Shown: positions 29,349-57,039 of the stretch, one piece after another
Layout of the letters: every line of letters starts with the position of its first letter
How positions within the stretch are numbered: position 1 is the stretch's first letter
The notes under the pieces: model-generated
What the model was told of the DNA's origin: nothing
The model's database searches: none
Seen by the model: only the letters and a program-made list of their open reading frames with translations
Program-made: the position numbers and the translations under genes
DNA from: Botryllus schlosseri
Taxonomy: Eukaryota
NCBI GenBank assembly: GCA_051294905.1
Contig: CM119384.1
Span: 18,972,001 to 19,036,000, forward strand
Direction of reading: 5' to 3'
DNA length: 64,000 nt

Positions 29349-31648
29349 CTATATATTGGGGCTAGTTGCAACATTAATTCACCCAGCAGAGATCCTAATG
29401 TGCTTTAACGGGCTTCATTCCAATCGGAAATTGAGTGAATTCTCAAGTCGAGGGAATTCCCAATGAGCACTGAGCACACGACTCGCCATTAGTATCGCTC
29501 GATTCCCTGCCCAGGCGTGGCCAACCTTTTTGCGATTCACTCGCCGCACTGTCATTATTTGTATACTATACTACCGCGTTCCAGCGGACAGTCGTAATGT
29601 ATATGTAATGTCCAGTAATCTCGCCGAAATCTACCGAAATCCCGAGTATTAATCTTCGAAAATGTATTGGAATTCGTTCTCTATAGTCGCGCAAAGCGCA
29701 AAAATGTTAGCAAGACATGTCAGCAATGTCACCTTACTATACAAATATCACATGACAGAAATACAAGATTATCTGAGATTTCAGCATCCAGTTAAGTCGG
29801 CATATCAATAAAGAAAGCATCCGGTCATATCCGTAAAACTAGGAACGTACTGTTAATCCTCATAATTTACGTTTATCCGTCGATACCTTCACGCAAAGAT
29901 ATGATGCAGATTTGCAAAACCAAACTTCCTAGCAGCAGACCGGCGATTTTCGCCAGTTTCAGTGGAAGGCATATGGGTGCGATACGGGCTAAAATTGTAA
30001 AGCAAATTGTCAAATTGAGGATGAAACGTTCCCTCCGTTATTGAAATCCACGAGATTCCGTTGTACAGATGCGAGACCCCGATGATGACAGACGACCATC
30101 GGCCGCGTCGGTCGCTCTGTACTTTTCATAAATATCTACTCCAATCTCTCCGTTATCGGACTACGTCACTCGCACTTCGCGGAAACGGGCCGCGCGGTTC
30201 ATTTCGTAAACAATTGCGCAATCGAATTACGGCTGACGGGCCATCGGTCACTACAACGAGCATCAAGTTGATCGTCACCGTTTGAACCGAAGCTCTCGAA
30301 ACGCCGCGGAGAATCGTAGGGCTACGTCACGTCTTCCATGTTTGACGGCTATCTTCAGACTATGCGGCGCTACAGACCTATAACACAGTGCTAATTATTG
30401 GAAATTATTACAATCGCAGCCTCAAAAGTTCCATAACTGATATGATTAATAGAGGAGAACCCACCAATCGAGCCACCATCGAGTCAAAATCATACAATTC
30501 AAATATAGTTATTGTGTAATGGGTATTTTTCAATATTTGCGTTATTTATCATCGGTCTGCTACCGAGTGCATTCCCCAGTCCCCACACTATAGGCCTACA
30601 CTGCAACGTAATATTTTTTTAACGTGCCATCGTGTATTTTTCATCGATTGCATTTTATTGGCAAACACAACGGTATTGCAGAGCGGCTATGAATGTCACC
30701 CTTACTGATGATCATTGATCATGTGTGTTCAAAATGCGATTTCAGATTTTGTTACAGATGTTTGATACCGTAGGGTTTCTTGACCCTGTGGCTGCGTTGC
30801 TAATTCACAGTCACGGTATTGAGACGAACGCTCGTAATATATATTTCGGTCTGGTTATCTTCAGTTTGCTATTGGTTTTTAGCCCGGAATGATTTGACTG
30901 CGTAAGCCATTTGCCTAGATATACGCCATTAGACGTACAATAAGCGATGATTGCATTCACTATACTTTTACACTCTGCTCTACAGACTATCTTCGCCGTC
31001 GGGCCACAGGGGGATATCTCATTCTGAAATAGGTTTACAGTGTATGAAAGCACTGCCCTACCGTAATCAGTTACGAATATCATGCAATCAATCACACTGT
31101 TGTGTATCTCGTTTTATACACTCTGTTTATTATAGGTGAGTTCGTAAGTGTTGGTATAGATGAGCGTTAGATCCTCACAATCACGATCGTAATCAGCGGC
31201 TCTAATTCCTATGCAATACGATATACAGGACACAAATCCTCGAATACAGACCGCTTTACAAAGGATGCATGCGAATTCAATCCTTACTTACTTGTGTAAA
31301 GGGAAACGTGAATCTATAAGAGACCATACATGGAAGCTATTACAAGTCTTTAAAGTATCTAGTTTCGTGAATAATCATCGGTAAACATTGAAATGACGCA
31401 GTGTTATGCAGAATAAGCTGTACAGTATACTTCACATACAGTATACAATACATAGACGCCGCTTTGTCAAGTCCGCGTGTCGTCCGCTCGCGAACCGCAC
31501 TCCTGTAATCAAGAATGTTTATTTCCTGACCCCATTTCACATCTGGTTGCATAGAAACCGAAATTTGGAATCGTGACGTGTCACACCGTGAATTCATACC
31601 CCCGATATCATTATTGATCGTACTTAGTCATCCCCACTTATCCTGCAA

Positions 31649-33003
31649 CATGGCCTACTAAAAACACGGCCTTACAGTCTGCCTATTGACCTGAAAATTA
31701 AGAGGCCTAAAGTCAACTTTCCAACCCTTACCAGCTGTGCACTCAATTGGTCAGAAAATGCGATATTGCCATAATGAAAAATCAACAGTCCCTTTAGTCT
31801 TGTTCGCAAACAGCTCAAAGATGGCATAGGGAACATTTCCAAAAGTGTCTTGTACGCTTGGCAAGAAATAGAACGTAAAAGCAAGCAGTACCGGATCATA
31901 GTGCTAGATGATGCCAGAGTATTTCCAGCCTTGTGGTATCTTAGATTACGCAGCTCCTCTAAAATATCTACTTCGGTATCCGGATCAGTTAGACTATCCA
32001 AATAGCTTTGGAAGTTTAGTAGCTCGCATTTCCTTTTGAGCAGAGTATTCTTGCTTGTGCGGAACCATGTTGGTAAAGGCACAGGTATCCCATTATGTTG
32101 CATCAGCACGCTGCACCCTCAATTGACGTCAATTTTCATGGCATTCTTGATTTTTGGAAAGCCTTCCAAACATAGCTCATAGTACATAACATGGTGATCC
32201 CCTGCTTGAGACTTTGGCAGATTTCACAGTAGTATATCTAAAAGTACACCTATTAACTACACTAGAAAATGAATATTAACAAATCAGCCTATAAGTATAT
32301 ATCACTTTAAAATAGTATTCCGCCACAGCACCATATCCAAGCCTTGCAACAATTAATGAAATTCTATAGAAACAGTTACAATGAACATGCCTTCGTCATC
32401 ATAAATGTCTTAGAACCAAAGCTACCAGTTATACAATTCGTGAAATAGACTACCGTATCCAAGACTATGTTTGCGAGAAAGCAGATTATGATACTACAAT
32501 GGAGCCGTTCGAACACGACGTTCTTCGCGTCAACTTGAACCGCTGGCACTGTCGAGGAACCGTAACCTGATTGCCAACTAACCTATCAAATGATAATACT
32601 GACCCTTAGCTCGTGAATATACTCTAGACAGCGAAAGAAACAAGTGCAATGCGACGAACAACAACACACGGCGCAACCCGCACAACTGCAAATGTCTTGA
32701 CTTCTTCAACAACAAGAACAACAACTACAACTGTATTCATCCGCACGAGTTTTTGCAGTGATATCAGTGGGTTATCCACCTGACTAGCAGCTCTTTTGGG
32801 ACTAAAATGATTGTTTCCGTGTTAAAACGATATTCCATCATCTTAACACATTAAATCCTGGTCAGAATCCACTTGTGGTTTTGACTTGCGCGCTACTTAC
32901 CATCTGCGTAGGTATAACCGTGAGATTTACACTGTTTCGGAGCTGGCCTCTTAATTTTCAGGTCAATAGGCAGACTGTAAGGCCGTGTTTTTAGTAGGCC
33001 ATG
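31649..33003 (-). mobile_element. P-superfamily DNA transposon, internally deleted derivative
   Basis: Perfect ~59-bp TIRs starting CATGGCCTACTAAAAACACGG and a perfect 7-bp TSD CCTGCAA (31642-31648, 33004-33010). Contains a P-like transposase remnant. Confidence 0.9.
31789..32217 (-). pseudogene. P-element/THAP9-like transposase fragment with an in-frame stop at 32119-32121
   Basis: GFPKIKNAMKIDVN*GCSVLMQHNGIPVPLPTWF...ILEELRNLRYHK...SSTMIRYCLLLRSISCQAYKTLLEMFPMPSLSCL resembles, from memory, the region of invertebrate P transposases just upstream of the catalytic domain. It is truncated before the DDE residues. Confidence 0.75.
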
Positions 33004-33794
33004 CCTGCAATAAACAGCAGCATGTTCTAAGGTTTGGCACTACTTAACGAATCGCCTGTTTAATTCTTATTTTTTTGAATTCATAGTCCCGTCCAGATTG
33101 CGAATTTGTTTCCCCAAATTTCCCAGATCTTCTCGAAATCCCTTTCAGAAGCTTTTCAGAGTTGCGGGTGATATCGTATCGGCGCCATGTAGCACAGGAA
33201 AAAGAACTTACAGACTTGTAGCGCTACAATTGGTTCTCGAATCTACATGGCGAGTCTTTCCGATGCTCAGTCGCAAATTATCTGGCACATTTCCTGATTA
33301 TTTCTTGATTTTTTTCAGAAAAAAGGGGGTCTTGTCATTCAGATGAACTCAATTTGGTATAATCATGCAAAATGTCGAATGCGTTGTATAGTTTGTATAT
33401 GCTTATTATACTACAGCTTCGACAAACCCGACCATTAACAATAAGAACTGTGTAATATTCTCTAAAGCAGACGGATATATCATCATCATCACATAACGCC
33501 GGTGATATCACAGACAACACTTGCATTATACTGATTCGCACTTCCCAACTGCGAAATGAAGATCGATTGCAGTAGAGTAGAATGAAAACCGTTAAATGAC
33601 ACCCAATATCAGATGTCTGATGGAAAAGCAGTCTGCTCGACGGGAAACAGTGCATCAAAAATACAAGCTATGACGAAGTTATCTATTATATTATAATATA
33701 AGTCATGGATATGACAGTTCAGAAGTTTCAAATTGCCCAAACAAACTCGTAATCAATGACATATGTTTTCATTTGCAATAATCATATCGACAAG

Positions 33795-34306
33795 TAGGGC
33801 TGGGCGCAATGATTCGAGTACTCGAATATGAATCGAGTATTCATTTTAATGATTCGAGTCGAGTAGTAAAAGGTGAGTTTTTCGAGTACTGAAATTATAC
33901 GCTCCTCGCAACTGAAAGTTAATTTACTAACAATAGAATTATAGTTTTGATACTATTGAAATCTTGAAATCTTGATTGGCCGTGTCGCAGCATACGAGAC
34001 ATAGTACAAAGCTACGAACGTTACTGGAAATAACACATTATCGAAGTCATCATTATCCCACAACATTGTCAAGAAGTGCAATGAAATCGGTATTGTCGAA
34101 AAAATACCAAAGTAGGCTATATTTAATGTGACGGATAACTGACATTATGTTCTTTGTGGTGGCATAAAAAGTACAAATTTGAACTTTGATATTTTGCATT
34201 CTGTTGTGACGTCATAATGAGTGATACTCGAATACTCGACTCGACTCGAAGCGTAATACCTGATTCAGAATCGAATTACGCAGGTACTCGATTTTGCCCA
34301 GCCCTA
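33795..34306 (+). mobile_element. hAT MITE, TAGGGCTGGGC family, copy 1
   Basis: TIR TAGGGCTGGGC, perfect TSD TCGACAAG (33787-33794, 34307-34314), and TCGAGTA subterminal repeats. Confidence 0.92.
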
Positions 34307-37300
34307 TCGACAAGTACCACATACGGACGCTTTCAGTGACACTGAAGCAGGTGATATGGAACACACGCTCAATACCGATATGGATATAGCCACTGCATAA
34401 ATAAGATACTTTCTCCAATGACAACTGATCCATGACAATTCCTCATATTCAGGGATATGATCTTATGTGCAATGCCGACGTCTTTTGTAGTCACCAAGTA
34501 AACGGTCATGATGATGTTTACGGAGTGTTGATTAAAATCACGCCCTTCTCTGAATTGGCCGTAATAACAATCCATTGGAGCGTATAAACGTGAATGTAGG
34601 ACAAAAAATTACGTCAGGAACCTAAGCGAAATATGTTTTGTATCGTCGTGTATTGACCGGTTAATCTAATCCGCATGTCTCACATATGTGAGTGTTCGCG
34701 ACTCATGGACGTGTAAACGAATTCGTAACGTGAGAGCCTTGTATATGACAGTTTCTCTTAAGTCTATGTATGGAAAATATATTTGAGCCATGTATGATAT
34801 ATAGTCGGTCACACATACGTCGCTTGTGTCGTATATTTTTCAGCATTATAGCCTCGATCCGTCATTGGAATTCACAAGTTGCGGTTAAGGAAATTTTTCA
34901 AGTTGACAACGCAGTGAATACGAGTAGGCGATGTACAATATAATGACCGGCACCCTTCTATGAGTGTAAAGATATAGTAATATTGTCATGAAGTATCCGG
35001 GTATGATACTTGAGTAGTACCAGGGCCTACGGCAGTAGGCTACTAATTTCCGGTTTGCCGTATATTTATCCTGTCCTAATCGATAAAGATGAATTTCCGA
35101 TCATCTCCGGAACTCGAAATAAAACTATAGGACATTGGACTTGAACTTCAATCGTAAATCATTATTAATCGAATAAAACTCATGAATTAGATTAAGCTGA
35201 AATTTACCATTAAAATCTGCATTAAAATGACGTTGATTTGGAAATTTAAAAGTGAGAAAACGCAATTTTACTGTCTCCAAAATGTGAAAGAAAATATAAT
35301 TTGACGCATCCCTATGCCTGCTAAAATCTGGGATTTATATCGTGAAGCTTTTAGACCAGGCATTCCGCATGAAACAATATTTCATCACCCAATCTATAAT
35401 TCTTCACGGTCATGGTCAGGTCATGTATTGCCAATGTATGGAATCATACCACGTCGAAATTTTATCTACACGGGTTACCCGCCAAATTCGATATATTTTT
35501 CATTGGTTAGAGCTGTTATCTTCTGACTTTGCTCCTGGTCTAGTCCCGTGTCATCTTCATCAGTATTACATGGCATAATCAAAATATTCTGGTATGCGGA
35601 AGAAATACAGGATCGTATATTGCGTCATCTGCTTTGCCCGTCGAAGCACGAGATTATACTCGTGGTGACGCAACACAAGATCATGAAAGTTGCATGGCTC
35701 GAATGGGAAACATGTATAATGCATAAGTCATGGGCGAATATACTAATTACTTTTGATAGCTTTTCTGCTTGTTCTGCTGATATCAGTATATATGGCAGCT
35801 GCTTTCGAAAAAAATTGATGTTCAACAACTATCACAAAACGGGGTCTATAGCAGCTTCGGGTATGCAGGAGATAACCTGCGCAGTGCGCACGTATGGTCA
35901 TTGGTCAATGGTCATGACGACCACGTACTGTAGGTAACATGTCTTTTGCCGAATCATCGCGTGGACATTTCAATGTGTTGTGTATTCCTCTTTTTCACTA
36001 TAGTTTTCCGAGTTTTGTGGCGATCTGTGTAGGCTAAGGTGGAAACTCGATTGGTTGACGTCAACGATTGGTTTCAACTTCTTTCCTTCTTTTAACTGTA
36101 TTGAAATTCTTGATGTAATTTGAAATGATAAAATGCATAATAAATGATCATGATAATTGAAATGTACATCCGCCCGCCAGTACCCGAGTGTATTCGTGCC
36201 CGACCGGAGTCATCATGTTGATCTTTGTTATTTGTTTACTCTCTGAAGTTTACCCAACTATGAGCTTTTGAAACTTTGAACCTGTACTGCATGACAAACG
36301 TAAGATGCAATAATTCATTCAACAAACATTACTATACTAACTATACATGCTGCTTGTACCTTGGTGATGTCGCACGTCAAATTGTAAACATATATACCGT
36401 GTCGAAATGCGTGATTGTTTTAACCTATAATAAGGTAATTTATGCTAGGACCTAATATGACCTGGTTGGTTTGATTCAATGCAAGACATCAACGTCCGCT
36501 TGGGCATTGGGCAATGACAAAATGTAGACTGTTCTACGTACGAGCGGTCAAATGTAACTTGATCATTTTGACTTTAATATCAACACGCCCGCTAGACTTC
36601 CTCATCCGCCTCAGAAAAGAATTATCGATGCATTTGATGATTTTGATGTATACGTTCACGTCATCCTTTTATGATTTATGTCCATTTAAACAGTTGGTTC
36701 GTGGTACAGAACTTGAAGATAATTTTCAATACAACATCCATTGCACCCGAAAAGTCTTCGAGTTGAGAGAGAGAGAGAGAGAGGTAGGAGGGAGATGTGT
36801 ACGCAACTGCGTCGACGATTAACAGGAGCAAACGATAGTGGTTGTGAATATGATATCTGTACACACAACGCGCTGAACGGCATTAGATTTTAAAAATGTG
36901 ATGTTGTTATAGGCAAATGAATTTCCTGCCACATTCTGACTCGTGCCATTACAATATTCCAAGGGTGAGAAGGACAATGCCCTCGCAGCGTTTCGTGACG
37001 TTGAATACTGGTGCTTATCCTGATCTGCAGTACATGCGTTTCACGTGACGCGTATGATCTCAGAGCGTATTTATGCTATTTCAAGGAACGAAAATCGTTT
37101 CTAGCCCATATATGGTTGTAATATAGAGTCATCGGAGGAAATCGAAACCACAAGTGCCGACTTGTGGTCGAGTGTTTGGCAACCGCCTATCCCCAATCAT
37201 GGATTATTGCTTTATCAGATTTCAACATATGATTTGGGTGATTCATTGCTTGAAAGCAATCCGCGCGAAATAAATTAGTATCGACAGTATTGCTAAGAAT

Positions 37301-37718
37301 ATGTCTGGAATTATGCACGGAAGACTCATGACATAGCCGTATCCATCACAGAGAAAATTACGATGGCTATGTCAGTTGTGCCACACGCGTAACTACTCAC
37401 TTACTCAGCATAGAACCTACTTAACGATAACGAAAACAACTGCACCGTCTATCTATTGAATCGCGAATTCTAAATGTTACAATACGCTGCTCATAACTAT
37501 GTAGGCCTACTACCGTAGATCGATTAATTGTTTTCATCATAAACATGATATATTTAATAATAATGTATTTATCTTTATTGCATGAAGCTTTACGAGATGA
37601 CACTGAGCATGGGTTACCTATAATACGAGCATTCAAACATATCGGTATCGCTACTTACGGCGTCTCACAGACTAATATTATAATCTAATGCAGACACGAG
37701 CAGGACTGTGTCAAACAG

Positions 37719-38216
37719 TTGGGCTGGGCAAAATCGAGTACCTGAGTTATTCGATTCTGAATCACGTATTATGCGAGTATCGCTCGTTATGACGTCATAA
37801 CAGAATGGAAGATGTCAAAGTTCAAATATTTACCTTGCATGCCACCCGAGAGAATGTAATACCTCTTATCCATCACATTAAAGATACTTAGGTATTTTTT
37901 CGACCTTACCCATTTCATTGCACTCGGTGACAATGTTGTGGGATGGTCAGGACTTCGGAAATGTATTATTTCCGGTAACGCTACTCATAGCTTTGTTCTA
38001 TATGTTTCGTATGCTGAAATACGGTCAATTAAGGTTTGAAGGCTTGCACAGTAGAAAATAGTGCCGAAACTATAATTCTCATCGATACATAACTTTCAGT
38101 GGCGAGGAGCGTATAATTTCAGTACTCGAAAAAATCTTCTTTTACTACTCGACTCGAATCATTGAAAATATTACTCGATTCAGATTCGAGTAGTCGAATC
38201 ATTATGCCCAGCCCTA
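37719..38216 (-). mobile_element. hAT MITE, TAGGGCTGGGC family, copy 2 (inverted)
   Basis: Homologous to the reverse complement of 33795-34306. Perfect TSD TCAAACAG (37711-37718, 38217-38224). Confidence 0.92.
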
Positions 38217-39930: not shown

Positions 39931-40203
39931 GCCAAGCAAGATAGTGTAACGGTGATGCGTCCGGCTTCTTGATCGGTAGGTCTTGGGTTCAATCCCGCGG
40001 CCGAGTCAGACCGAAGACTCGGAAACTGGTATCCGCAGCTATCCCGCTCGGCGCTCAGCATGCACGGTTAGCAAGAGGAGTGGTGCAGACTATAGATGGC
40101 TTGCTTAAAGATCTCCATCGTCAAAGCATTTCGATAGTGCAGGCGAAAATAAGTCTTCTCTCTCTAAAAGTCTACAAACAAGCCATGAACACTACCTTAT
40201 TTA
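39931..40203 (+). mobile_element. tRNA-derived SINE, family 3 (possible Meta-type core)
   Basis: A box TAGTGTAACGG and B box GGGTTCAATCCC, followed by the core accgaagactcggaaactggtatccgcagctatcccgctcggcgctcagcat. Confidence 0.7.
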
Positions 40204-40556
40204 TACGTGTGCTGTACGTACATTTGTTGGAATTAGTATTGTTAACCGAAAACCCTTTAGAACGGTCGTGTTTACGCTAAGCAGATCCTTTCAGCGACTC
40301 GCATCATCACTGAACATGACGTTCATTTAGGCTTGTTAAATAGATTATAGAACTAGAATTAGTGCAAATGGAGTATAGGAACGAACTTAGGTACAGGGGG
40401 ACACGGAAGGCATGCAGTTGGACAATGGACACGTAGCCTACGATTTATAAGAATGCATTAAAGTTTACACCATGAATAAATCCAACCGTTTCTTTCGTGA
40501 AGTATAGTCAAAAGGACTGAACTAGCGATTGAACACATACCAGGGATATCTAGAAC

Positions 40557-40614
40557 CGGGGCCTACGATAACTTAATAATAAGTTAATAAGATACTAAGT
40601 TATCGTAGGCCCTG
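40557..40614. mobile_element. 58-bp P-like palindromic relic (19-bp arms plus filler)
   Basis: Arms C(G/A)GGGCCTACGATAACTTA (18/19 identical) with a 7-bp TSD CTAGAAC. Confidence 0.75.
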
Positions 40615-42278
40615 CTAGAACTTACCAGAGACATCTAGATTTACCAGGGAGTTCTAGATAGCCTATCCCGGATACACACATAGAATGAAAAACTCCGGTT
40701 AATAATGATGATTGGCTGAAATTGGCTCTAAATTGGCAAACACAAAAAAGGAAATAATGATTAGTCGGCGACCATTCTGGTGAACAATTAAATCGACACC
40801 CCGCGAACGGGCTTCTGAATTCTGAATTGGTCGCGTTTTCGTGTACTTATACCCGTATGGTGTGAATACACCCTCTTTTCACACTCTTAGTAGATATGCC
40901 TACATAATTTGCGAAAAATCTGGGACGGAATTCAGATGATACAAAGTTTCGTCACCCCTCAAATTTACCACAACGCCATACGCGGACTTCGCTGAGTTTT
41001 CCTGTCCCGTCACCATCCGTTAGGCCATTACGATATGGAGTCACTTGGGTTCTTTTGGCATATCGAACGACGCCCTTCAATTATTGAAATTATTGTAGCT
41101 TTATTAGAGCTTGCTTGGCAATAAGTCACAAATAAAAACGTTTTCAATACGTCAATTATTATTCTTGGATAAGCAGCTTACACACCTATGGTTACGGAGC
41201 GGGGTAATTTCACGATTACATCAGACGCAACAGAGTTTCCGTATTTACACTCGGGTATTCTCGAGATTAATATTCATTCAAATGGGCTAATTGGCTAATA
41301 TGAACCATCCCTGTCGGTGCTCGCGAAGACAATGATTCGATTCAAACTATGTACTATATGGTGCCTCACTATCTCATTAGCAACTCTTTCGGTACATGAT
41401 CACATTTTCGCATTTTTTCCGGGCTCCATATAATCGACTTCCTACTGATTTAGGTCTGTGACTGAAATTGAGTCAGGCATTCTCGAAGGTGCGACGCGAA
41501 CACAGGCTTATGATCAATATAGTTGTTTGGTGGAGCATTGGCGTGGCGTAGCAAGACATGCATAACATGAATTGTGTGTGCCCTACATTGTAGGGAGCTA
41601 TGCGCTATTGGTGAACGCTATGTAGATTGTATGTCCACTTGGTCAATATTTGGCAAATATGTCTTCGCCTCACAGCTGCCGCGGCTTTTTATGTTGGGGA
41701 TTGACTAGCGCGCGGTTCTGAGGAAGAGTCATAAAGCGTATTAAGGCAAATATTTTGCCGCACGTGAACTAAGAGACAGACGGTGTCAATAAGTAGCCAT
41801 CAAATATCAAGGTTGCTTCAGCATATACTGTAGGTAGATTTGTTTGTATTAATTCATCGCGCCATGCTAACTGAGAGCTGGCAGCGAAACCGATAATATA
41901 TCACTGCGACCAGGCGGGAGTCACCACAACCACCACATACCACCTCCATCACACCCACCATACCTCACAACACGCCACCACTATTTAGAGGAGACATCAC
42001 CACCACCATACCACTTTCTCATACCACGTAGGGATTGCAGTGTACTACTAGGCCATGCGCGGACATATAAAACTTGAACGTTAATGTGAACCCTTGACCA
42101 CAAATTATAATGACCAAGTCAAAATACCGTATATCCCGAACTTTATATACATGGTGAACGCAAAATAACTGTAATGACGTCGCAATCAATAAACCATATA
42201 GGATGCCAAAATTCGAAATTGAGTACCAAACAACTATAAGTCGCATTTCTTTCAAAAGATTTGTCGGTAAGGTTCACT

Positions 42279-42312
42279 CGGGGCCTACGGTACTTAAGTA
42301 TCGTAGGACCCG
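42279..42312. mobile_element. 34-bp P-like palindromic relic (17+17 nt)
   Basis: cggggcctacggtactt|aagtatcgtaggacccg with a 7-bp TSD GTTCACT/GTTCACC. Confidence 0.75.
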
Positions 42313-45300
42313 GTTCACCGCTCCGCAACATTCTTTTTCGAGTTTTACTGGTTCGCGAGGTCAAAAGGGTTGAGAACCACTGGCCTACAGTTCTCTTACA
42401 AATGTTAACATAGGTCAACATATGTCCACACGATAGCCTGATATTCGGTCACGGAGATTTTGCAGCAAGGCTAATTTGGCTAACTCGAACTATATACTTT
42501 CCTATCATAGCATTATGGCGAATACCATACGTTTCAATTTTCCCAGTATTAACGGGCAGATTCGTTTTGTTCTTGTGGTGAAATTCTTTTTCGGCTCCTG
42601 ACATGATAAATCGTCTAATGTCAATTGTCAACTAATGAAAATGTTTCTCTTCATTTCATTACTCGCTGCTCGGGGATATGTAGAACTCGTAAATATTCTG
42701 CCCCTGCTGAATAGCACCGAAATGATTTACGTCAAGGCCTTATCGGGTCAAAGTACAGTAAACTGTTGGCAATACTGGCATGCCTTACATTGGCTTGCAT
42801 CAATGGCTGCAACAACTACAGTTGACGATCTTTGATCAGACTGGGATCATTACATACGAAACCTTGTATGGTCGAAACTTTCTCAATAGCGCGGAGAGCT
42901 AAGAGAAGTGACTCTAATTATCCCGACTTACCAACACACATAAGCACACTGAAACAAACCATACAATCCAGACTATATAGCGGGTCCACTCAACAATTTA
43001 CGCCACTAACTATACAGCAGGAAAATAACAGCTATTACGACAATACGAGTATCTTAAAGTAATCTGCATTCAATGATTCCGCCGACCGTCGTTCGTGGGA
43101 GGTAGCCTATATTATATACTATTTTGGTATAGAGTAGGGGTGGGCAGACCTGCTTCATTTCCGAGCCGCATATCAAAAATTCTAGCTGTAAAAGAGGCAC
43201 GACAAAAAATACGAATTTATTACGTCACAATGAAATGTAGGCTTTCGAATGAAGTTTATCATTGTGTGGGCTGCAGGGTGTTTGAAATCGGGCTGATATG
43301 ACGTAAGCAGTGCGGGGTAGTTCCTTCAAGTGCGAATGAGAATTTAAGGATGATATCAGCTCGGTAATCTCAACGACATTTTCTTGGCCAAACTCTGCAG
43401 TTATTGCTTGTTTTTGCAATAAAATGAAAGGGCCATATTCACCATTTCTAGCTCGGAAATGACCGTGACCTGCGCAGGCGCATTAGTTATCAAGTTCATT
43501 GTTGAACACAATGATTTATAATTGATTCATGACCAGTGACCACTGACCAAGTGACCAGGCATATATATATTGTTGCGGGTGAAAAGTTTATGTGAACTCG
43601 ATTCGCGATTTCAATTGCTGTAGTGGCAACTTCCCCTAAAATTATACAAATCTTGCGTAAACCATAAGGAAATACACAACACGAAACAATACTCATATTG
43701 TTAATACGCGATAAAATGTATCAATTTATAATCAGGTTAAACCTCTCTAGCAAAATGGTGAAAATCGTGTGCAATCATGAAAGAGTCGCAGTTTGCCCAC
43801 CCCTGGATAAAATATCGTTTCAAACCGGCTAGTTCCGGTACAGCATTCGCTAGAGGAAGAAGAGAAACGAGAATCAGAAGTTAGGAGAGGAAAAATACTT
43901 TCGTCGTTGAAGTGACGTCACCGATAAATTATGACGCAATCAAGAGCATCGATGTCAAAATGCAACTGAACGGAAAAATTGCAATATGCAAGATTTCGTC
44001 ATGCTTATATACTGCATGAAAGAATTGCCAATACGCACGCCTCACGTATGTGGATTGTCGAATATACAATTGGTTCTTGCGCCTTCGTCAAATCATTTCA
44101 CAACCGCTCACGATCGAAAATCCTGACAGAACTCAAGACAGACTCTTTCCAGGAAACGGAGAACTACCGCAACTGCGCGATGTGCACATTGCAGAATTAC
44201 TCTCGAGCTTTATGGGTTTCTTGCTTTGATGAACCCTTTTATTCACCCATCTCATCTAAACTCATTATCTCGGTTTCAAAGCACTCTTATTGGGATCAGG
44301 CAAGCAAACACCGCATTTGGGATTGATTTCATTCTATATCGGTAATTCAGGAAATGAAACTTATAAAGTTTTGGGGCACAACGCATTTGTAAATACGAGA
44401 ATACTGCTTTCTGATTTTACGAAACATCCTGTGTGGCGATGCTTTTCCAGAAATTCCTTCCCAGCGTTCAAAAATATCACCGGGCGTCTCTGTTGAAGTA
44501 GTATACGAGGAATATTCCTGGGAGTTCTCGTATTACGAGGTTACAATCGAAAACAACCCAGTGCTGCGTTCCAAACGCGATCGCCGCATAATAAACCGGT
44601 CACGTGATTTCGTTTGACGTCATATCATACACAGGTTGTTATTCGTCGAAAAGGCGCCGTGATACCTATCACGTAGACGTAGCCAATTATTGTCCATGGA
44701 TATCTAAATTATAAATCTAGATAACGTGGGCAGGTAGGGTGCGGGATACGTTCCCATGGACTCGTCATCCATCCGAATTCTGGAGTGGTTTAGAAACCTG
44801 CTTTACAATCAATATATACCTTATATATTTTGTATACTTCAGATTATTAGGCCATAACAGACTACTACAGACAATCTACATAGTATTTGTATTATAATCT
44901 CCCTGAGAAGGATATACTTTACTTGCTAAGTCAATTTTATGGGAAGTTTGTATCAATTCCATTTGGAAAAAAATATGATTGATTTACTTCACCAAGTCCT
45001 TTCGATTCCTAATTGCAATTATGTAGTATTTTGGCTTGATTGCGCTCTTTCATAAAAATGATTCTGATACCTATGTAAGACGATAATTTTATCGATGCAA
45101 TATATTTCTCGAAGTGACCAATAGATCGGTCACAATTGTTTGTATTTACGTCGCGAACTGTAAAACATTACTTATTTCGGGAAGCAACATGCGAAATATA
45201 TATATATACGAAATGATGTATTGCGGGATATTGATAAAACTTTGGAGGGGTATCGTACTTATCCAATACCCACATGGAAATATCCGTTACATGTGGTGTG

Positions 45301-48126: not shown

Positions 48127-48572
48127 CTATACTCCCTATAGTTATTCCGTGTTGTTCAGAGTCGAAGGGTCAAATGCCGTTTTCCGAATCATCGCGAGGG
48201 CCACTTGATTGTTGATGATCTTTTTTAATTTTTCGATATGAGGGAACAGGCGGCTGGACATATCAATAGGTTTCGGCCAACACGCGTCGATCATTTGGGC
48301 CACGGTTTCATAGCCGACAATCATTCTTCTGGTGTAAATTAGGCATATTTTTCATCGTTGTTTTTCGGGAGGTGTACTAAAGGCAAGAGATCACGTGGAG
48401 TGTGAATAAAATATTCAACTTGAATAAATATGCCACGAAAGGCTTTACTTAATGCATAATTTACAAGGGTTTAGGAAGAATGTGGGAGTGGCATGATCCA
48501 GTTCACCTTTCCTGGATACGACAATGCGCGTACCTCTACACTGTTTTAATAGTCATCAACATCCCAAATTTC

Positions 48573-48937
48573 GCGGTCATGCGATTGCAGTTGGTGAAGC
48601 ACCATCGCCCCGACACCAAGGGCATTGGTTCGAATCCCAGTTCGGGCCAACTTCTATGTGTTGGAGGTTTATCTGGGCTCCTCAGTGCGATTGCAGTGTA
48701 TGAAAAAGTCCAGTATGAAGGTGAGCCGAGCTAAAAATCGGCAGCAAAGAGACAAGATTCGGACGCATGAAAACCGAGAGAGAAGCAACGAGAGCGCGTG
48801 AATGGAAGTCATCCGAAAATCTGACGCAAAGACCTCGAAAGAGTTATATCTAAATAAATTACTGTGCGGGCGCAAACGACCGAATGAGTTGACAAGCGCC
48901 AATGTTGTGAAATAAACAAACAAACAAACAAACAAAC
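48573..48937 (+). mobile_element. tRNA-derived SINE, family 1
   Basis: B box GGTTCGAATCC, core GGAGGTTTATCTGGGCTCCTCA and tail GACAAGCGCCAATGTTGTGAAAT(AAAC)n. Second copy at 56695-57037. Confidence 0.85.
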
Positions 48938-49825
48938 ACGTATTTGAATAATCTTTTTTGGGCGGATCGCACAATCCTCCCACAGAGCGAGGGTTGGAGG
49001 CCCCCGTACACAGCAAAGTAAATTCGCAGCACAATTCCGCGTTTACGGCATGCTGTTTATACGCAACGTGCCACGCGGATTCCCATCGAAAGAAACAACA
49101 TGCATGCGTATTTTCGTTCCGGAAATGACACCGCTTCACATCATATGGGTTCGTAAAAGAGCATGCTAGCGGATGATGGAATACCTTTGGTGAATTAGTG
49201 GATGCGACAGTTAGTCATGTCTCATGCCCAGTTCTAAATGTGGTAGAACTTGAATAAAATATCATATGATTACCTTACACATTCATAACTTGGCTAATAT
49301 GTATCATAGATCAACTATGGTAAAACTGGCATGTATCAATAGCACATTAATCATCGAGCGAATGCTGCATGTCTGCAGCAATTGTGCAACAATATTATAT
49401 AACTTCCAGTGGTTTTCATCCTCTTCACGTATCACTATAATGATACACGGAAGCTTCCTGGGTGGTGTGAGACTTACAACTATAAAATTATGCTGTATAC
49501 TGTTGCGCTGGCTAGATTAATTCTGACACGCTGTCTCTTGTTCTATAAATATATTTAGCTTATGTTGATGGCGTCCATTCAGATACTCAATTTCCCCACC
49601 CATATTTGCGCTAAAATTCAACGTGGTATAGTGCGTTTTCTATAAGTTTTATTAACAAAGGGATGTTTGGCGTCTGACTTGAATTCTAGTGAAGCGCAAT
49701 TCAAAATATATCTTAACCACGGGCACAGTCTCTAATTTCTCCACAATAAATCTTCGATTACAAGAGACAATGCTTGAAGGAAGCCCCAAAATCCATCCGG
49801 AATCATTTTGATCAAATTCATTCTA

Positions 49826-50110
49826 TATATCTTCGAATAACATTTCGGGAACGATCAGTACATATTCGAGTGTTGTGGCGATTTTGAGCTCACGCATCCT
49901 GTCGAATAAAAAGTTTCTATGATAATCATATCGATGGCAGTGTAGCAAAAATAGCTCGACTGTTTCTGGTACTGTGCAATGTTCGCATAGATCAGTATCG
50001 CCACATCCAATTTTGTATAAGTGGCCAATGGCCTGAACGAAGCCGAAATATATATCGTTCGTAAAGCCTGTGTCGATGCATAGATGGAAAGTGGTTAATG
50101 TGTGCCAGTT
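49826..50110 (-). pseudogene. LINE ORF2 C-terminal zinc-knuckle remnant (I/Nimb-like group)
   Basis: An ATG-less open frame reads HLYKIGCGDTDLCEHCTVPETVELFLLHCHRY...RNFLFDRMRELKI, a CxxC-x7-(H>L)-x4-C motif typical of I-group LINEs. Confidence 0.7.
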
Positions 50111-53100
50111 TATTTTCGTATTGACCAGTTCCGAATTAAACTTAGTTATAGTTACATTGATGAAAAACTCTCATACTCTACGCCATACACCAATATTTCG
50201 GCAATAATAGAATATATGCTTTCGACTGCTTCGTCTGTGCTGTTTTGTGAGTTCATTTGAGCAAATTGTGTCTCAGTGGTTGAGATGAGTTCTAAATACT
50301 TAATTAATTTGATATGTATGCAGATTGCTAAATATTTAGCCGTGTTTTCGAATGAGTGAAATTGGCTACCTCCGTATCCAATGATTTCCCAGCCTACGCA
50401 CTTGTCCAATCAATGAAGTCAAGAAAATGGGAGTGTCCAATATCCATCACAGGGATATCTAGTTCTAGATATCCTTGATGTGCATTAGCAGAGCTATGCG
50501 CTTATTCCTATTCGATTTTAATCATCGTGAGCTTGCGAATGGCGCTTGCAACAATGTCAATATATTACTATAATGTGCGTCAGTTTCGATGCGATCACTT
50601 GAGGTACCAGAAGTGGGTAAATTTAGGTCATAATGTACATGTACATTTATCCTGCTCTAGGCAGAAGTCACAGAATCGTAGGACCAAACATTTCTATTAC
50701 AAGTCGTATATGTCACACCGGTCGAAACGACAAGCGATTTCGGTGTTATATCCTTTTATCGGTATGGTTACCTGGCGTTCTAAACGACTTTGGTTCAGTC
50801 ACAAGGAAATAGCCCATACGTATTACGTATACACCGCAGATGTGTTTAAATATTAGCGTGACACTAAGCACACAGTGAAGTCCGGAAGGTTATTTTAGTT
50901 TCGAATTTGCATTGCATGTTTGCGATTAGTTCACAATACTAGCGCCATTTCGGGCACCTATATTCACGGATGCAGTCAGGATGTTTCACCTGTGTTGAGT
51001 TTGATCAGTATTATAACCATCATTTTACCATGATATAAATATAGATATGGAAACATTAACGATGGGTTCGACAGGCTAGCTACACGCTTACACCTGTCTA
51101 CCCATCTATGCTGATGGCCCTCGACTGCAGGGATTATCCCTATCTGACGTATATGAGCTGGTATGAAGGGAGGGTGCTCTTGAAATGTGTTCTGACGCTT
51201 CCAAATGGCTGCTAAGCAGCGCAGCCCATACGTGACATGCAATTCATGGACAGGAAATACTGCTTCCCTTGGCGCCGTTGAATTATTGTCACACTTTGTT
51301 TTAAATTTCGACCAGCAAAATATGAATCGTATACGGATCCAAGTCATTTACATAGCGCTGTCGGTATTTTAAAACAATGACATGTTAAAGTGCTAATTCA
51401 AAGAACATATCCAATTCTGTGCTCTTTTATCATGTGGTACCATGTGCAGTACATGAACCAAACACGACCTTCCACTAATACAATTATAAGTTCATTCTCA
51501 ATACACAGACTTGCACGAACCTAAATGGCTGATTGTCCTACGCAGATTGGTCGGTATCTAACATTAACGCTCGAAACAACACATACACGAATTCACAACA
51601 TCTTCCCATTTCGCATATTCCGACCACATCTACTTTTTCAAATTGTAACCATCGGTATTATGCGTCGTAAGATGGAAATTGGTGTAAAGATGATCTTTCA
51701 CAATGTACTGTTACGGTGCCGACTCAGATATTCTAAGAAGCATCACTATATGCGATAAATTATTCAATGTATTATCGTCCGGGAGTTCTGAAAGTTTATT
51801 ACACCATCGATACAGGCGAGGAAATCGTATGCAGGCATGGGTTATTGATGATGGGGTGACACATTTCATGCAAAGTGAACACACGCTTTCGCAATCCCTT
51901 ATGCATTGCTGCCCGCTTAATGAGGGGGAGTGGCATGAAATATTTTCCCGCCCCAATGAAACAATTCGGTGAGGAAATTTCTGGACGAATGCGAAAAGCA
52001 ACATGAAGGTGCGAATTGGCACGACACAGAAAATTAAAATGTTGGCAGTAACATTCTTTGCGTGACGTCATAATGACGATCACCTCAACATCCGAGCCAG
52101 ATGAGAGTGGCTTTTCCAGCCTCTAGCTGCGCTGCGGGGCATACAGCCATATATTTTAGTAGTGCATCATGAAACTGTTTAAAAAACATATGACTAATCC
52201 AGACATGATATATCTACCACCAGGCTGAATAGGCAGTGCGCACCAATGAAATTAATAACTTTCATCTGAATAAGAACAGTGTGTAAAAACACTATGATGA
52301 CCCGTTGTATCCAAGACCGATTGTACGTATCAGTCAATCACAAAAGAGGTGGCATTTTCCCACGTTATCGCGACACAGTTGGATATCTTGTTTACGCGAA
52401 GCCAGTGCCATACCGCACAAATGCGGCCAAAAGATACTATATCGAAGGAGTGCGCTGTTTCCAGGATACCGCTCGATCAAACTTGAATTGAGTGCCAGGA
52501 GACGATGGTAGTGTACAACGCGTTTGCCTACATCGCTGTTAACTTTTTATTATGGAAAGTCATATGCTGTTAACAAAATGAACACACACAGGGCAATATA
52601 TTTTCTTTCGTCGTTTTGCTACTATTCAATATAAATCCGCAACTATATAGTATATATCCACTTGATAGTATACCATAGTAAATGTGGTAAGTATGAAACT
52701 TAGAATTTCGTGAGGTAGCCATTTAGGTTGAATGAATGATTCATTGTGGCTTTGTTCTGGTGCATTGTGTGTGGATTCCTTCTTCTATGCATTCAAGATG
52801 ACAGTACGGGTGAAGTTCCCAACGGGATAAAACTATAAAGGCATTGGTAGTACCAAACGCTCGTGTCCTGCAGTGTCAAATATAGGCAAGATGCATTTAA
52901 TCCGGCCTAAATTTCTTTTGAAACAGCATTCATTACAATTGATTTGAATCAGATGTCATCACAGATGACAGAAGAATTGATAAAATAATCCTCAGGAATC
53001 AAAAAGGTTCGCATCCGCAATGTTACAATAGTAAAATTAGTGGTTGGATAGGGCAAGAGCGTCATTAGTTTTTTTGCTGGCCCTGCCGGTACGTGCATTG

Positions 53101-53229
53101 GTGTATAAGTGGTACAAGTGATGTGTATAGCCAGTAATTAGAAATCAAGCCATTCACGGCACACGTTTGAATGTTTTTATGACATTTCCCCTATGTATAG
53201 TTCTATAGTATATACTTTATAGATGTATA

Positions 53230-53349
53230 CAATTAAATAGTATATTCATATTGAAATGAACCCGAATATTTTCGGCTGACACTCGTCAGGGGTAATCGTC
53301 AGCAACTAGTAGAGAATTGGAAAGAACATTGTATATCAACAATCGTATC
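53230..53349 (-). ncRNA. 120-bp mini-element with an intact minimal type I hammerhead ribozyme motif (core 53260-53293)
   Basis: The core is identical to 27359-27392. Flanked by an 11-bp direct repeat ATAGATGTATA (53219-53229, 53350-53360). Confidence 0.72.
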
Positions 53350-55172
53350 ATAGATGTATAGTTACCAATGATGACCTGTAGAGTCAGGAAAAAAGGCACA
53401 TACGCGGCAGCTGAGTTCACTTAGAATAGTGAGCACCATACGTAATGTTCTGAAACGAAATTCATGTCAGCATGTTAGCCGAACATTGGACCCAAAATGA
53501 TATTTAAATACTTCTCACACAAAGAAGCCCAGTTAACGTTATTTCACTAAAATCTGTTGTGCCGTTTTGCTTGAATGCTCTCCCGAGTAATGCGATTCCG
53601 ACCTGTTTTCGCACAGGTATTACACTACCTGTCACCATTTCACAGGTAAACGAGTTATTTTTTGTTAACTTACAAAGAGCGCAGAGACGTTTATTGACAC
53701 AACCAAATGGTTAGGTTACATTACTCACCACTGTAGTAATCTTGCAAATGGACTGTGTTTTTGTTCGTCTATTTCGAGTCCATAAATTCTATGATACAGT
53801 GAAGACAAAGCTGTCGTTAATGATTCCACATTATCCACCTGAAAGTGCTCAAAGAGAATATCTTAGAATTTAACCGTACCCATATTAAGACCCGCGATTA
53901 CAATGTTTCAGAGACTTAATGGTGCAATTCACCCATTTCCAAATCCACTTTCCCTTTTCATGATATCATTAACACGAATAGAGGCTGAAATGTTACAAAT
54001 GTATTTGAGATATTCGTAGAACTTCATGTACATTTATGAAAATATCTTCATAGATAGGCTACTTGGCGGGCCGGATTCCTGAATCGATACATTAAACGAG
54101 TATTTATCCACCTATACAAGGATTAATCGTATTTAATGTAAACTTTTAGTTTGAAGCATAGAGACCAAAGAAGTATTCAATGAATTTATTTACGTAATGT
54201 ATTTCAATAGCTGTTGAAGTCAATTGAGACATCTCTGGTCGATCAAGGTGGCATACAGGTTCTTTGAACTCTGGGATGCGAAGAAAACAAAGAACTGAAG
54301 AACTACTGACAATCGCTATTATTTGTGTCCGCAAAAAGGATCTAGAATAACCTACGGTTACAATAATTTGACGTAGTAAGCAAGTAGCGGAGAATTGTGG
54401 TAGACTGTGACCGCCGGTCATATTATCATTTAAGGCCGAAAACTGTGTGCGGGCAGCTGAAAACCTCGTCGCCGGCCGAATCAACTTGTTATTTCTAATG
54501 TTTTTAATAACTCCAGGATATCATGTTACTGTTGTGATACACATGTATATTCTGCAATTAGAAAAACACATGTGTGTGCACTGTGCAGTAACGATTTCAA
54601 GAGCACTTCACAATTCGTAATTGTAATCATTGGATAGGTGTTAAACAGGTGGTGAAATGTTTGCAATGAGTTCGTGTCTGCAACACTTTATTCTCAAACC
54701 AAGATAACATAACCTATCTTTGTGCGCTTTTGAATATGGTGAAATCACCCGAGGACAAGGAAAAATATATACTCTATAGCGATTTTGGTACAAATGAAAA
54801 TTTGAGTCATGCTATGCCTGAGGTCATGTATACGACATAATCCTTTTCATGATCGTTGAGCATAGTAGAATATAGTCTAGATTTTCCTTTGGGCTTTGAT
54901 TTTGGGTCTAAGTTTGTATGTTGCTGTTGAGTATTCGCAACATGTATTCACGTTATTTATATGCCATGCATTGATGATCTACAAATTGTGCTATCACACA
55001 TACATATCTTCTAATAGTATAAATAGTATAATCGATATACATGTAATACGAGTATGCATTATACAGATAAATTTAATAAGTTGTGCAAGTAGACCTTCAC
55101 CTGATTCATCAATTTATTAAAGCTGGAATTTGATTTATTCACTAACCGAATTGAAGCTATAGTGTATAATAG

Positions 55173-56100
55173 TAGGGTTAGTTCGGATATCAATAGTTTT
55201 CACTATCCGGATAACGGATATATCCGTATAATTTAGCTAACCGGTTAACCGGATAATAACTGCTAAGTGAGACAATCGATTTCACGAGGTCTGCATGAAA
55301 AATGGATCGCAAAATCATTACACAGTGTTATTATAGATCTATACGTACACGCGCAGAACGAGCGAATACGAGAAAAATCAACCCAAATTTAATGTTCACT
55401 GCTGTTCACCGCAACGCCCTTCTTATAAAGCACACTGCATCAATTGTGGCATCCTGTTGCCAGGACAGGAGTTTTGTAACAAAGAGTCCACATGCATTGA
55501 ATTCCTCTTTCTGCTACCACAAAATGGGCTGACTATAGTAAGTTTGCACGGACGAACATGTTTGCGAAATGCGAACATTCGATGTTATTCAGTTTCGCGA
55601 TGTCGCTCATTAATCACAATCGCTGATCAGAGTACTCTTAGCGGCATATTGTCTCCAAGCCACAAAGAGATAGGAGCAAATGCCTGCCAGGCCCGAGACG
55701 CGATTGTTACGACAGCGATGATATCGTTCGTGCCATGCCTATTGCAGATGCGATTCTGCCTGCGGAACTATAGGCTTGTTAGAGACTCGATAAATCAGGC
55801 CAGCAACGATAGCCGAGTGCGCGGCAATCAATGACCTAATTTAGCGATCTTAGCGGGAGATTGCATCGCGTTACATGTGCACAGACGTATCTCGCTAATT
55901 GGCAACACGTTTCTCGCTAAAAGGCCACGCGCAACACTGATAATACCACTTATTGAAGCTTGCTAAAAAGTGTAAAACGCATTATCAATGACACTATTTT
56001 ATCCGGTTAACCGGCAGAATTATATCCGGATATCAGATAACAAGAAAACCTGCGGTTAACCGGTTAACCGGTTAACCGTTATCCGGATAATCCAACCCTA
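55173..56100. mobile_element. hAT non-autonomous element with palindromic subterminal repeats
   Basis: Termini TAGGGTT...AACCCTA and perfect TSD TATAATAG (55165-55172, 56101-56108). TATCCGGATAA and CCGGTTAA repeats occur at both ends. Confidence 0.88.
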
Positions 56101-56694
56101 TATAATAGACTATAGCACAATAGGACGAAGGTGTTTCAATGAGGCAATCAATACGAGGGATGGTGTGTAAATCTGGTAGTTCCATAGCTGCAACACCTAT
56201 AGATTCCGGGTTCTAGCCTGACTGAGATGTCCTGTTTTAGTTGACGAAGAAGCTGTCGTGGTCAAAGTTTGACTGCGCCATAAGCCGGTACACATACTCA
56301 CGAATCAGCAACCCAACATTCAGGCGAATGGTACACAGTTCAAGATCATAGAAGCTAAATTACCATATAAAAATCATGCAAAAAAGAACTACTGAACTAC
56401 ATATAAATTGTTATTACAGATGTATGAATATTGAGTTTACGCATTGCGTAAGAAGTCAATTGGGTGCGAAACTAGGCGGCTTCACCGTTTATTGACGAGT
56501 AAAGACTGCAAAGAGTGATTAATGGTAGTGGTGACTCCTTAATCGGGTTTCATGCTACATATGTCGCATGTTATATGTTCTATAACATGAGTTCAACCAT
56601 TATAAGCTACCAAAAGCACCATAGCAGGCAGAGATTTCTATTTTTAAAACCAGCTGCCTCTAATTCTATGTTGTCACCCGGGATCAATGTGTTA

Positions 56695-57037
56695 CGAACT
56701 GAGTGGCGCAGTTGGTTAAACACTGCAGTTACGACACCAGTGGTTGATGGTTCGAGTCTCGGCTCTGCCATGTTTCTATGAGTCGGAGCGGAGTATAAGT
56801 ATCGTAGGCCCCGGTCGGAGGTTTATCTGGGCTCCTCAACGCCGATCCCGCTGTAAATACAGCGCCTTCAAAATCCCAGCAGAAGAGAGAGCCGAAGTCT
56901 GGAAAGATGGCAGCTAAAGACCAGAAAAACGAAGCAAGACCGCGAAAAGACATTCTTCTGTTAATGCAATTTATGTGCTGGGCGCAAATAACCGTATGGG
57001 CGACAAGCGCCAATGTTGTGAATAAAACAAACAATAA
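56695..57037 (+). mobile_element. tRNA-derived SINE, family 1, carrying a 25-bp P-like relic
   Basis: A box TGGCGCAGTTGG and B box GGTTCGAGTCT, with the same core and tail as 48573-48937. Confidence 0.85.
56789..56813. mobile_element. 25-bp P-like relic inside a SINE
   Basis: Right arm taagtatcgtaggccccg and a perfect 7-bp TSD GTCGGAG. The paralogous SINE has the single empty site (gttggag). Confidence 0.75.
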
Positions 57038-57039
57038 TC

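What the first reader, a model, noticed from the sequence alone, without database searches (positions are those of the whole stretch)
42272..42319. A 17+17-nt palindrome with a 7-bp TSD: likely P-element excision footprint in a non-insect genome
Seen: a spacer-less 34-bp palindrome (cggggcctacggtactt|aagtatcgtaggacccg, 15/17 matched) between 7-bp direct repeats (GTTCACT/GTTCACC). Two more members with the same terminus and 7-bp TSDs lie at 40557 and 56789. The terminus shares GGCCTAC at positions 4-10, and the 7-bp TSD length, with the P-family element at 31649-33003. Established: Drosophila P transposase cuts in a staggered way and leaves 17-nt 3' overhangs of TIR at the donor site, so end-joining leaves about 16-17 nt of each TIR between the TSDs. 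Inference: these are scars of an endogenous P family that uses the same 17-nt cut, joined here at a TTAA microhomology. Such scars would be a genomic record of the cleavage chemistry.
Basis: partly seen in the sequence, partly recalled or inferred. Interest (0 to 1): 0.82.

Follow-up and report, generated by a model that had tools for sequence, protein, structure and literature searches.

The report
Transposon excision scars, probably P-type
Three tiny remnants of one DNA-transposon family, each boxed in by a 7-bp target duplication, are most likely scars left when a P-type jumping gene cut itself out of an animal genome. This is a known kind of scar seen here outside insects, and the claimed "exactly 17-nt cut" is not established.

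Summary
The window holds three members with the terminus C[G/A]GGGCCTACGATA(A)CTTA and 7-bp target duplications: a 34-bp spacer-less palindrome (42279-42312), a 58-bp copy (40557-40614) and a one-armed 25-bp remnant (56789-56813).

All three are insertions or shared alleles:
- The 58-bp copy is missing, with an exact empty site, in another individual.
- The 25-bp remnant is missing from a paralogous SINE-like copy.
- The 34-bp copy is older and shared between individuals.

The neighbouring element 31649-33003 does carry a P/THAP9-type transposase remnant. Autonomous P-like elements from other genomes have the same CATGGCCTAC end, one of them with an exact 7-bp duplication. The P link therefore rests on indirect but consistent evidence.

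The three structures match the three junction classes seen after Drosophila P excision. I read them as excision scars (about 0.55).

What is not shown:
- No parent element was found.
- The retained arm length is 17-19 nt, best fit 18, not demonstrably 17.
- A TTAA join needs at least 19 nt per arm, so it contradicts a 17-nt cut.

Rivals are a self-mobile micro-element and shrinkage in place.

The scan has noted the same 17+17 palindrome type at least three times on other pieces of this genome. Natural P-family scars are already known in Drosophila (BuT5).

The parts
42272..42278 (.). left 7-bp target duplication of the 34-bp member (GTTCACT)
   Evidence: 6/7 identical to the right copy
42279..42312 (.). 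34-bp spacer-less palindrome, arms 17+17 (15/17 paired) around a central CTTAAG; older copy, present also in individual X7
   Evidence: record 26 covers 42045-42384 with 1 other letter and 2 gapped letters
42313..42319 (.). right 7-bp target duplication (GTTCACC)
40550..40556 (.). left 7-bp target duplication of the 58-bp member (CTAGAAC)
40557..40614 (.). 58-bp member: 19-nt arms plus a 20-nt AT-rich middle; polymorphic insertion, absent with an exact empty site in X7 and present in X1, X5 and X6
   Evidence: record 26 runs from 40549 straight to 40615
40615..40621 (.). right 7-bp target duplication (CTAGAAC)
56782..56788 (.). left 7-bp target duplication of the 25-bp member (GTCGGAG)
56789..56813 (.). 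one-armed 25-bp remnant: 3 nt of the left end (CGG), a 4-5-nt filler that repeats AGTA(T) of the arm, and a 17-18-nt right arm
   Evidence: absent from the paralog
56814..56820 (.). right 7-bp target duplication (GTCGGAG)
48660..48666 (.). single GTTGGAG in a paralogous SINE-like copy: empty paralog of the 56789 site
31642..33010 (-). related P-superfamily deletion derivative: perfect 59-nt TIRs starting CATGGCCTAC, exact 7-bp TSD CCTGCAA, and a 145-aa ORF (31672-32109, minus strand) homologous to the HTH region of THAP9/P-like transposases

Best explanation
These are donor-site scars of a cut-and-paste transposon family of the P superfamily. An element with ends C[G/A]GGGCCTACGATA(A)CTTA... 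inserted at each site and made a 7-bp target duplication (shown). It was later cut out with a long stagger, so that roughly the outer 17-19 nt of each end stayed on the flanking DNA as 3' tails (inferred by analogy with Drosophila P). End joining of the two tails gave three outcomes: a direct or short-microhomology join (the 34-bp palindrome), a join with an AT-rich filler (the 58-bp copy), and an asymmetric join in which one tail was chewed back to 3 nt and a few nucleotides were copied in (the 25-bp remnant).
For: - One family, far beyond chance.
- Real insertions with TSDs: an exact empty allele for 40557 in another individual and an empty paralog for 56789.
- The 25-bp remnant has only one usable end, a perfect TSD and a perfect arm. 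It cannot have inserted as it is, so it was reduced after insertion in a single young event.
- Three copies show three different junction structures, as expected of independent repair events. They correspond to the classes tabulated for Drosophila P{wa} excision: 14-15 nt + 2-nt microhomology + 14-15 nt, full 16-17-nt arms plus AT-rich insertions of up to about 49 nt, and one arm cut to 1-4 nt (PMC2895639).
- In the two independent events of the same subtype, three arms stop at the same place, after ...CTT(A).
- P link: the 7-bp TSD, and 8 of the first 10 nt (including GGCCTAC at positions 4-10) shared with CATGGCCTAC. That terminus sits on the window's own P remnant and on P-like elements from other genomes that encode THAP + TNP-like RNase H + THAP9_C proteins. 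Of these, L040 shows an exact 7-bp TSD.
- The 17-nt stagger is the known peculiarity of P transposase (PMC7776569).
Against: - No full-length or MITE-sized parent with this terminus was found in the window or in the metagenome scan, so its transposase is unknown.
- No allele with a full-length element at 40557 was seen in four individuals.
- The filler of the 58-bp copy is not significantly templated: its 7-nt match to the arm is reached by 12% of shuffles.
- The 58-bp copy may hold more than 19 nt of each parental end, which cannot be judged without the parent.
- The arm length cannot be fixed more tightly than 17-19 nt.
Confidence: 0.55

Rival explanations
1. Self-mobile micro-element: a 34-58-bp unit made of two ends only is itself moved in trans by a P-type transposase and has spread as such. 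The 25-bp copy is then a later-damaged insertion.
For: First-stage notes report at least three more 17+17 palindromes with 7-bp TSDs on other pieces of this genome (unverified). There are three members and no parent in 64 kb. The 40557 copy behaves as a simple presence/absence polymorphism, with no larger allele seen.
Against: The three copies have three different structures, so no shared internal sequence shows descent from a small master. The young 25-bp copy would need an extra complex deletion-plus-insertion inside a perfect TSD. From established knowledge, a 34-bp duplex is far below the DNA persistence length and cannot bring its two ends together in one synaptic complex. Drosophila P also needs internal transposase sites outside the terminal repeat (PMC7776569).
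Confidence: 0.2
2. Shrinkage in place that does not record the cut: a normal-sized element was reduced by abortive gap repair after excision (copying in from both ends of a sister or homologous copy, then annealing at the self-complementary TTAA/CTTAAG in the repeat) or by replication slippage. The arm length would then be set by where a self-complementary motif lies, not by the transposase.
For: The 34-bp junction lies exactly on CTTAAG, and a TTAA overlap would need at least 19 nt from each side, more than a 17-nt tail offers. Miniaturisation of transposons through microhomology is documented (title and abstract of PMC3814204). The 58-bp copy may retain more than 19 nt per end.
Against: The one-armed 25-bp copy stops at the same place on its long arm without using that motif for the join. 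In Drosophila, arms of 14-17 nt are the direct end-joining product, whereas gap-repair products are usually much longer (PMC2895639; partly my own knowledge).
Confidence: 0.2
3. Chance palindromes and chance flanking repeats.
For: None beyond the shortness of the sequences.
Against: There are 5 terminus matches against 0.14 expected, the structural scan finds only these and none in shuffles, and insertion status is shown twice.
Confidence: 0.01

Closest known systems
Drosophila melanogaster P-element excision footprints (17-nt 3' tails; P{wa} repair junctions, Chan, Yu and McVey 2010, PMC2895639)
   Same: Target duplication kept on both sides. About 14-17 nt of each terminal repeat retained. 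Joins occur at 0-3-nt microhomology and give a short palindrome. Variants have AT-rich fillers, and variants have one arm almost gone.
   Different: The TSD is 7 bp rather than 8 bp, and the end sequence is unrelated apart from the leading C. Retained arms are 17-19 nt (best fit 18), at or above the Drosophila maximum of 17. The transposase of this family was not found. These are natural, partly old alleles, not laboratory events.
BuT5 footprint in Drosophila mojavensis (BuT5 is a MITE of a divergent P element; PMC3355041 and PMC3698922)
   Same: A natural genomic scar of a P-superfamily element: a 27-bp fragment with 12 bp of one end and 15 bp of the other, between target duplications.
   Different: That case is an insect genome with a 9-bp TSD, a single scar at an inversion breakpoint, and a known parent family.
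Galileo / 1360-type P-superfamily elements with 7-bp TSDs (PMC2775673)
   Same: P-superfamily members that make 7-bp rather than 8-bp duplications.
   Different: Galileo has very long foldback repeats and a GTAGTAC target consensus. No such target pattern appears in the three TSDs here.
Intronless P/THAP9-like elements with CATGGCCTAC ends, from marine and other metagenome assemblies (loci L001, L002, L040, L044-L051) and the window's element 31649-33003
   Same: GGCCTAC at positions 4-10 of the end, a leading C, a nearby GATAC block and a 7-bp TSD.
   Different: Positions 2-3 are GG or AG instead of AT, the spacing of GATAC differs, and no coding partner is known for the scar family.
Very small palindromic MITEs such as the 80-bp mariner-derived MADE1/MiHsmar1 (from my own knowledge, not checked here)
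   Same: Two terminal repeats with almost nothing between them, flanked by a TSD.
   Different: Those keep complete transposase-binding repeats of about 37 bp and occur as thousands of near-identical copies. Here the arms are 17-19 nt and the three copies differ in structure.

Membership tests
P superfamily (P / THAP9 / Galileo) | Transposase with THAP domain, RNase H-like catalytic domain split by a GTP-binding insertion, and THAP9-type C-terminus | not testable with these tools
   No parent of the scar family was found. For the neighbouring CATGGCCTAC family it is met: the ORF at 31672-32109(-) hits the HTH region (residues about 160-290) of 833-873-aa THAP + TNP-like RNase H + GBD proteins at E 6e-12 to 6e-8. 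It gave no direct Pfam or PDB hit on its own.
P superfamily (P / THAP9 / Galileo) | Target site duplication of 7-8 bp | tested here: met
   CTAGAAC and GTCGGAG are exact, and GTTCACT/GTTCACC is 6/7. The single-copy target is seen in an empty allele and an empty paralog.
P superfamily (P / THAP9 / Galileo) | Terminal sequence related to that of elements with a P-type transposase | tested here: met
   C-NN-GGCCTAC is shared with CATGGCCTAC of four further P-like families from other genomes (L001, L002, L040, L044-L051) and with the window's own remnant; a fifth, L043, has a variant (CATGGCCAAC). Only 8 of 10 nt agree, so this is suggestive rather than proof.
P superfamily (P / THAP9 / Galileo) | 17-nt staggered cleavage that leaves the outer 17 nt of each end on the donor | tested here: inconclusive
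   Arms agree through 18 nt (34-bp and 25-bp members) or 19 nt (58-bp member). The 34-mer fits 17 blunt, 18 with a TA overlap or 19 with a TTAA overlap. A long stagger is compatible; exactly 17 is not shown.
Excision footprint (donor-site scar) | Both TSD copies kept, with only terminal nucleotides of the element between them | tested here: met
   For the 58-bp copy, the origin of the 20-nt middle is open.
Excision footprint (donor-site scar) | Junctions differ between independent sites (microhomology join, filler, asymmetric loss) | tested here: met
   Three sites show three structures, matching the classes in PMC2895639. The sample is only three.
Excision footprint (donor-site scar) | A full-length element at the very same site in another allele, individual or species | tested here: not met
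   At 40557 the four individuals show only the 58-bp allele (X1, X5, X6) or the empty allele (X7). This is a small sample based on contigs only, so the absence is weak.
MITE / micro-transposon | Many copies that share the same internal sequence and length | tested here: not met
   Within the window the three copies share nothing beyond the 18-19-nt ends. The genome-wide count could not be made.
MITE / micro-transposon | Two intact ends able to be bound and paired by the transposase | tested here: not met
   The 25-bp copy has one end only. For the 34-bp and 58-bp copies this is not testable with these tools.

The most novel reading that the evidence does not exclude
The scars are a natural, genome-embedded read-out of the cleavage chemistry of a non-insect P-type transposase. 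They would show that the unusually long (about 17-19 nt) staggered cut, so far measured only for Drosophila P, is ancestral to a widespread marine-animal clade of P/THAP9-like elements. Cut positions of uncharacterised transposases could then be read from scars alone.
Probability: 0.4. Interest if true: 0.6.

Novelty: new member of a known kind. Interest (0 to 1): 0.42.

Why it matters
The 17-nt stagger of P transposase is a biochemical oddity established in one insect element. If scars like these are common in this genome, a simple census would test whether the long stagger is conserved across the P/THAP9 superfamily, without any biochemistry. That census would tabulate arm length, filler and microhomology per family. 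It would also give a natural spectrum of end-joining outcomes on long non-complementary 3' tails in a non-model animal. For annotation, such 25-60-bp TSD-flanked palindromes should be recorded as past transposon sites rather than as new 'micro-transposons'.

Tried and rejected
- Parent in the window: none. A 13-mer search with up to 3 mismatches finds only the five arms. The GGCCTACG hits at 27598 and 35024 are not convincing ends.
- Parent in public metagenome contigs: 37 hits, all single, unpaired and inside prokaryote-looking coding sequence, so chance.
- Word-index protein search with the 145-aa P remnant: no hit, because candidates are limited by length.
- Pfam and PDB with the same ORF: no hit. 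Only the exhaustive HMMER search showed the P link.
- Seven look-ups of P-like transposase loci: four families with CATGGCCTAC ends plus one variant, none with the scar family's terminus. L041 and L042 showed no such end.
- Templating of the 58-bp copy's filler: the 7-nt match is not significant, reached by 12% of shuffles.
- Paralogs of the flanks of the 58-bp and 34-bp members in the window: none.
- Other short TSD-flanked palindromes in the window: none. 61608-61646 is a 39-bp palindrome without a TSD.
- The large inverted-repeat elements at 33795-38216 and 25514-28827 are unrelated; the first has hAT-like ends.
- Earlier-notes look-up by sequence: blank.
- A genome-wide copy count from the read-laying was not possible, because alignments to 17-19-nt arms are too short and most pieces were not listed.
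Full report
**What is there**

The window is 40% G+C DNA of an animal. Its identity is coded. An intronless SURF1 at 16181-17002(-) is most like chordate SURF1.

At the given place lies a 34-bp palindrome without spacer, 42279-42312. Its arms are 17+17 with 15 of 17 positions paired. It sits between GTTCACT and GTTCACC.

- 40557-40614 is 58 bp, with 19-nt arms, a 20-nt AT-rich middle and the exact 7-bp repeat CTAGAAC on both sides.
- 56789-56813 is only 25 bp: CGG, then AGTAT, then a 17-18-nt right arm, between exact GTCGGAG repeats.

The terminus occurs five times against 0.14 expected. A structural scan that knows nothing of the sequence looked for arms of at least 14 nt, a spacer up to 24 nt and 7-8-bp flanking repeats. 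It finds only the 58-bp and 34-bp members, and nothing in ten shuffled windows.

**They are insertions**

I laid contigs of four individuals on 40000-43500. One contig of run X7 passes from 40549 directly to 40615. It therefore lacks exactly 65 bases, the 58-bp element plus one CTAGAAC. This is a precise empty site. Runs X1, X5 and X6 carry the element unchanged.

The same X7 contig covers 42045-42384 with one substitution and two gapped letters, so the 34-bp palindrome is shared. That fits its two arm substitutions and one TSD substitution, which mark it as older.

For the 25-bp remnant, a paralogous tRNA-derived SINE-like copy at 48.6 kb aligns across the site. It has a single GTTGGAG where the 56.8-kb copy has GTCGGAG + 25 bp + GTCGGAG.

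**Link to the P superfamily**

The element 31649-33003 has perfect 59-nt terminal repeats starting CATGGCCTAC and an exact 7-bp duplication CCTGCAA. Its 145-aa ORF gave nothing in Pfam or the PDB.

An exhaustive HMMER search did find relatives: 153 proteins at E up to 0.001, 30 at E up to 1e-10, best hit 1.3e-21. The long ones (833-873 aa) carry THAP, TNP-like RNase H, the GTP-binding insertion domain and, in one, the P-element HTH, at exactly the matched region.

I fetched several such genes.
- L040 is a complete element with CATGGCCTAC ends and an exact 7-bp duplication GCTGCAA.
- L001, L002 and L044-L051 have the same terminus, and L043 has a variant of it.

So a clade of intronless P-like elements with this terminus exists, and the window holds a dead member. 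The 7-bp duplication is confirmed for the window's copy and for L040.

The scar family shares the leading C and GGCCTAC at positions 4-10, a neighbouring GATAC block and the 7-bp duplication. This is indirect evidence for a P-type parent, not proof.

**Comparison with known P excision**

P transposase cuts with a 17-nt stagger (PMC7776569). The donor flanks keep 17-nt 3' tails made of the outer end of each repeat.

The junction tables of Chan, Yu and McVey (PMC2895639) show what end joining makes of them.
- The commonest products are 14 or 15 nt + a 2-nt microhomology + 14 or 15 nt, which are 30-32-bp palindromes between the duplications.
- Blunt 17+17 joins occur.
- Full arms occur with AT-rich, partly templated insertions of up to about 49 nt.
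- Asymmetric products occur in which one arm is cut to 1-4 nt.

The three window members reproduce these three classes one for one.

The 25-bp member is the most telling. It has a perfect duplication and a perfect long arm but no second end. It therefore cannot have moved as it is, and must have been reduced after insertion in one young event.

- All five long arms agree through ...CTTA and diverge right after. That is 18 nt in the 34-bp and 25-bp members, and 19 nt in the 58-bp member, which has one extra A.
- The 34-mer is produced equally by 17+17 blunt, 18+18 overlapping TA, or 19+19 overlapping TTAA. A 17-nt tail ends ...CTT-3' and has no TTAA to offer, so 'same 17-nt cut' and 'joined at TTAA' exclude each other.
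- Without the parent one cannot say how much of the 58-bp copy is parental. Its filler is not significantly templated (12% of shuffles).

**Rivals**

- A self-mobile micro-element (0.2) fits two facts: the repeated first-stage notes of 17+17 palindromes with 7-bp duplications elsewhere in this genome (unverified), and the absence of any parent. Against it stand the three different structures, the one-armed copy and the physical stiffness of 34 bp.
- Shrinkage in place through abortive gap repair or slippage at the self-complementary CTTAAG (0.2) would still make the loci former transposon sites. It would remove their value as a record of the cut.
- Chance is excluded.

**What I could not do**

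No full-length element with this terminus turned up in the window, in public metagenome contigs or among seven P-like loci. No genome-wide census was possible.

**Novelty**

Natural scars of P-superfamily elements are already described in Drosophila. A 27-bp BuT5 fragment with 12 + 15 bp of the two ends lies between duplications (PMC3355041), and BuT5 is a P-associated MITE (PMC3698922). P members with 7-bp duplications are also known (Galileo, PMC2775673).

What would be new is the host (an animal outside the insects) and the possible use of such scars to read the cut. My searches turned up no paper reporting P-type scars outside insects; that is a weak negative. I rate it a new member of a known kind, of moderate interest.

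Noticed in passing
window 42341-42387: A piece of a very high-copy repeat, with summed word depth about 900 times the single-copy level in X1. It ends sharply at ...CCACTGGCCTAC (42387), 28 bp from the 34-bp palindrome. Many contigs leave the window sequence at 42387.
   Followed up: no
window 40000-40233 and 43159-43500: Further high-copy repeats, about 2500 times and about 170 times single-copy depth. The second shows many internal deletion variants in the contigs.
   Followed up: no
window 42044/42045: Individual X7 has 133 extra letters here. Three bases further on, the window reads CTAGGCCATG (42048-57), which resembles a right end of the CATGGCCTAC P clade. This may be another reduced element, but I could not see the X7 letters.
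   Followed up: partly
window about 56690-56850 and 48580-48690: Two diverged copies of a tRNA-derived SINE-like repeat. ARAGORN calls no tRNA in 48400-57100. The 48.6-kb copy served as the empty paralog.
   Followed up: partly
L040:8505-12317; window 31642-33010: An autonomous P-like element in another genome and the window's dead copy have nearly the same 7-bp target (GCTGCAA versus CCTGCAA). This hints at a target preference of this clade.
   Followed up: no
L044-L051, L043, L001, L002: Intronless P/THAP9-like elements of about 3.2-3.7 kb, each assembled as its own contig. Many come from marine (Tara) metagenomes, and most have CATGGCCTAC ends. This looks like a widespread, probably active clade in planktonic eukaryotes.
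   Followed up: partly
window 61608-61646: A perfect 19+1+19 palindrome (AAACATGTTTCAAACAAGG / C / reverse complement) with no flanking duplication, so not of the scar type.
   Followed up: partly
window 33795-38216: A 4.4-kb element with about 500 bp of structured inverted ends starting TAGGGCTGGGC and an imperfect 8-bp flanking repeat. It looks like a hAT element, and its two long ORFs have no Pfam match.
   Followed up: partly
window 35021-35040: CAGGGCCTACGG followed by CAGTAGGC, with left flank GTAGTAC. It may be a decayed one-sided relic of the same family, but no convincing TSD is present.
   Followed up: no
window 16181-17002 (-): A complete SURF1 domain in a single ORF of 273 aa, so apparently intronless. 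Earlier notes mention other intronless large genes in this genome.
   Followed up: no
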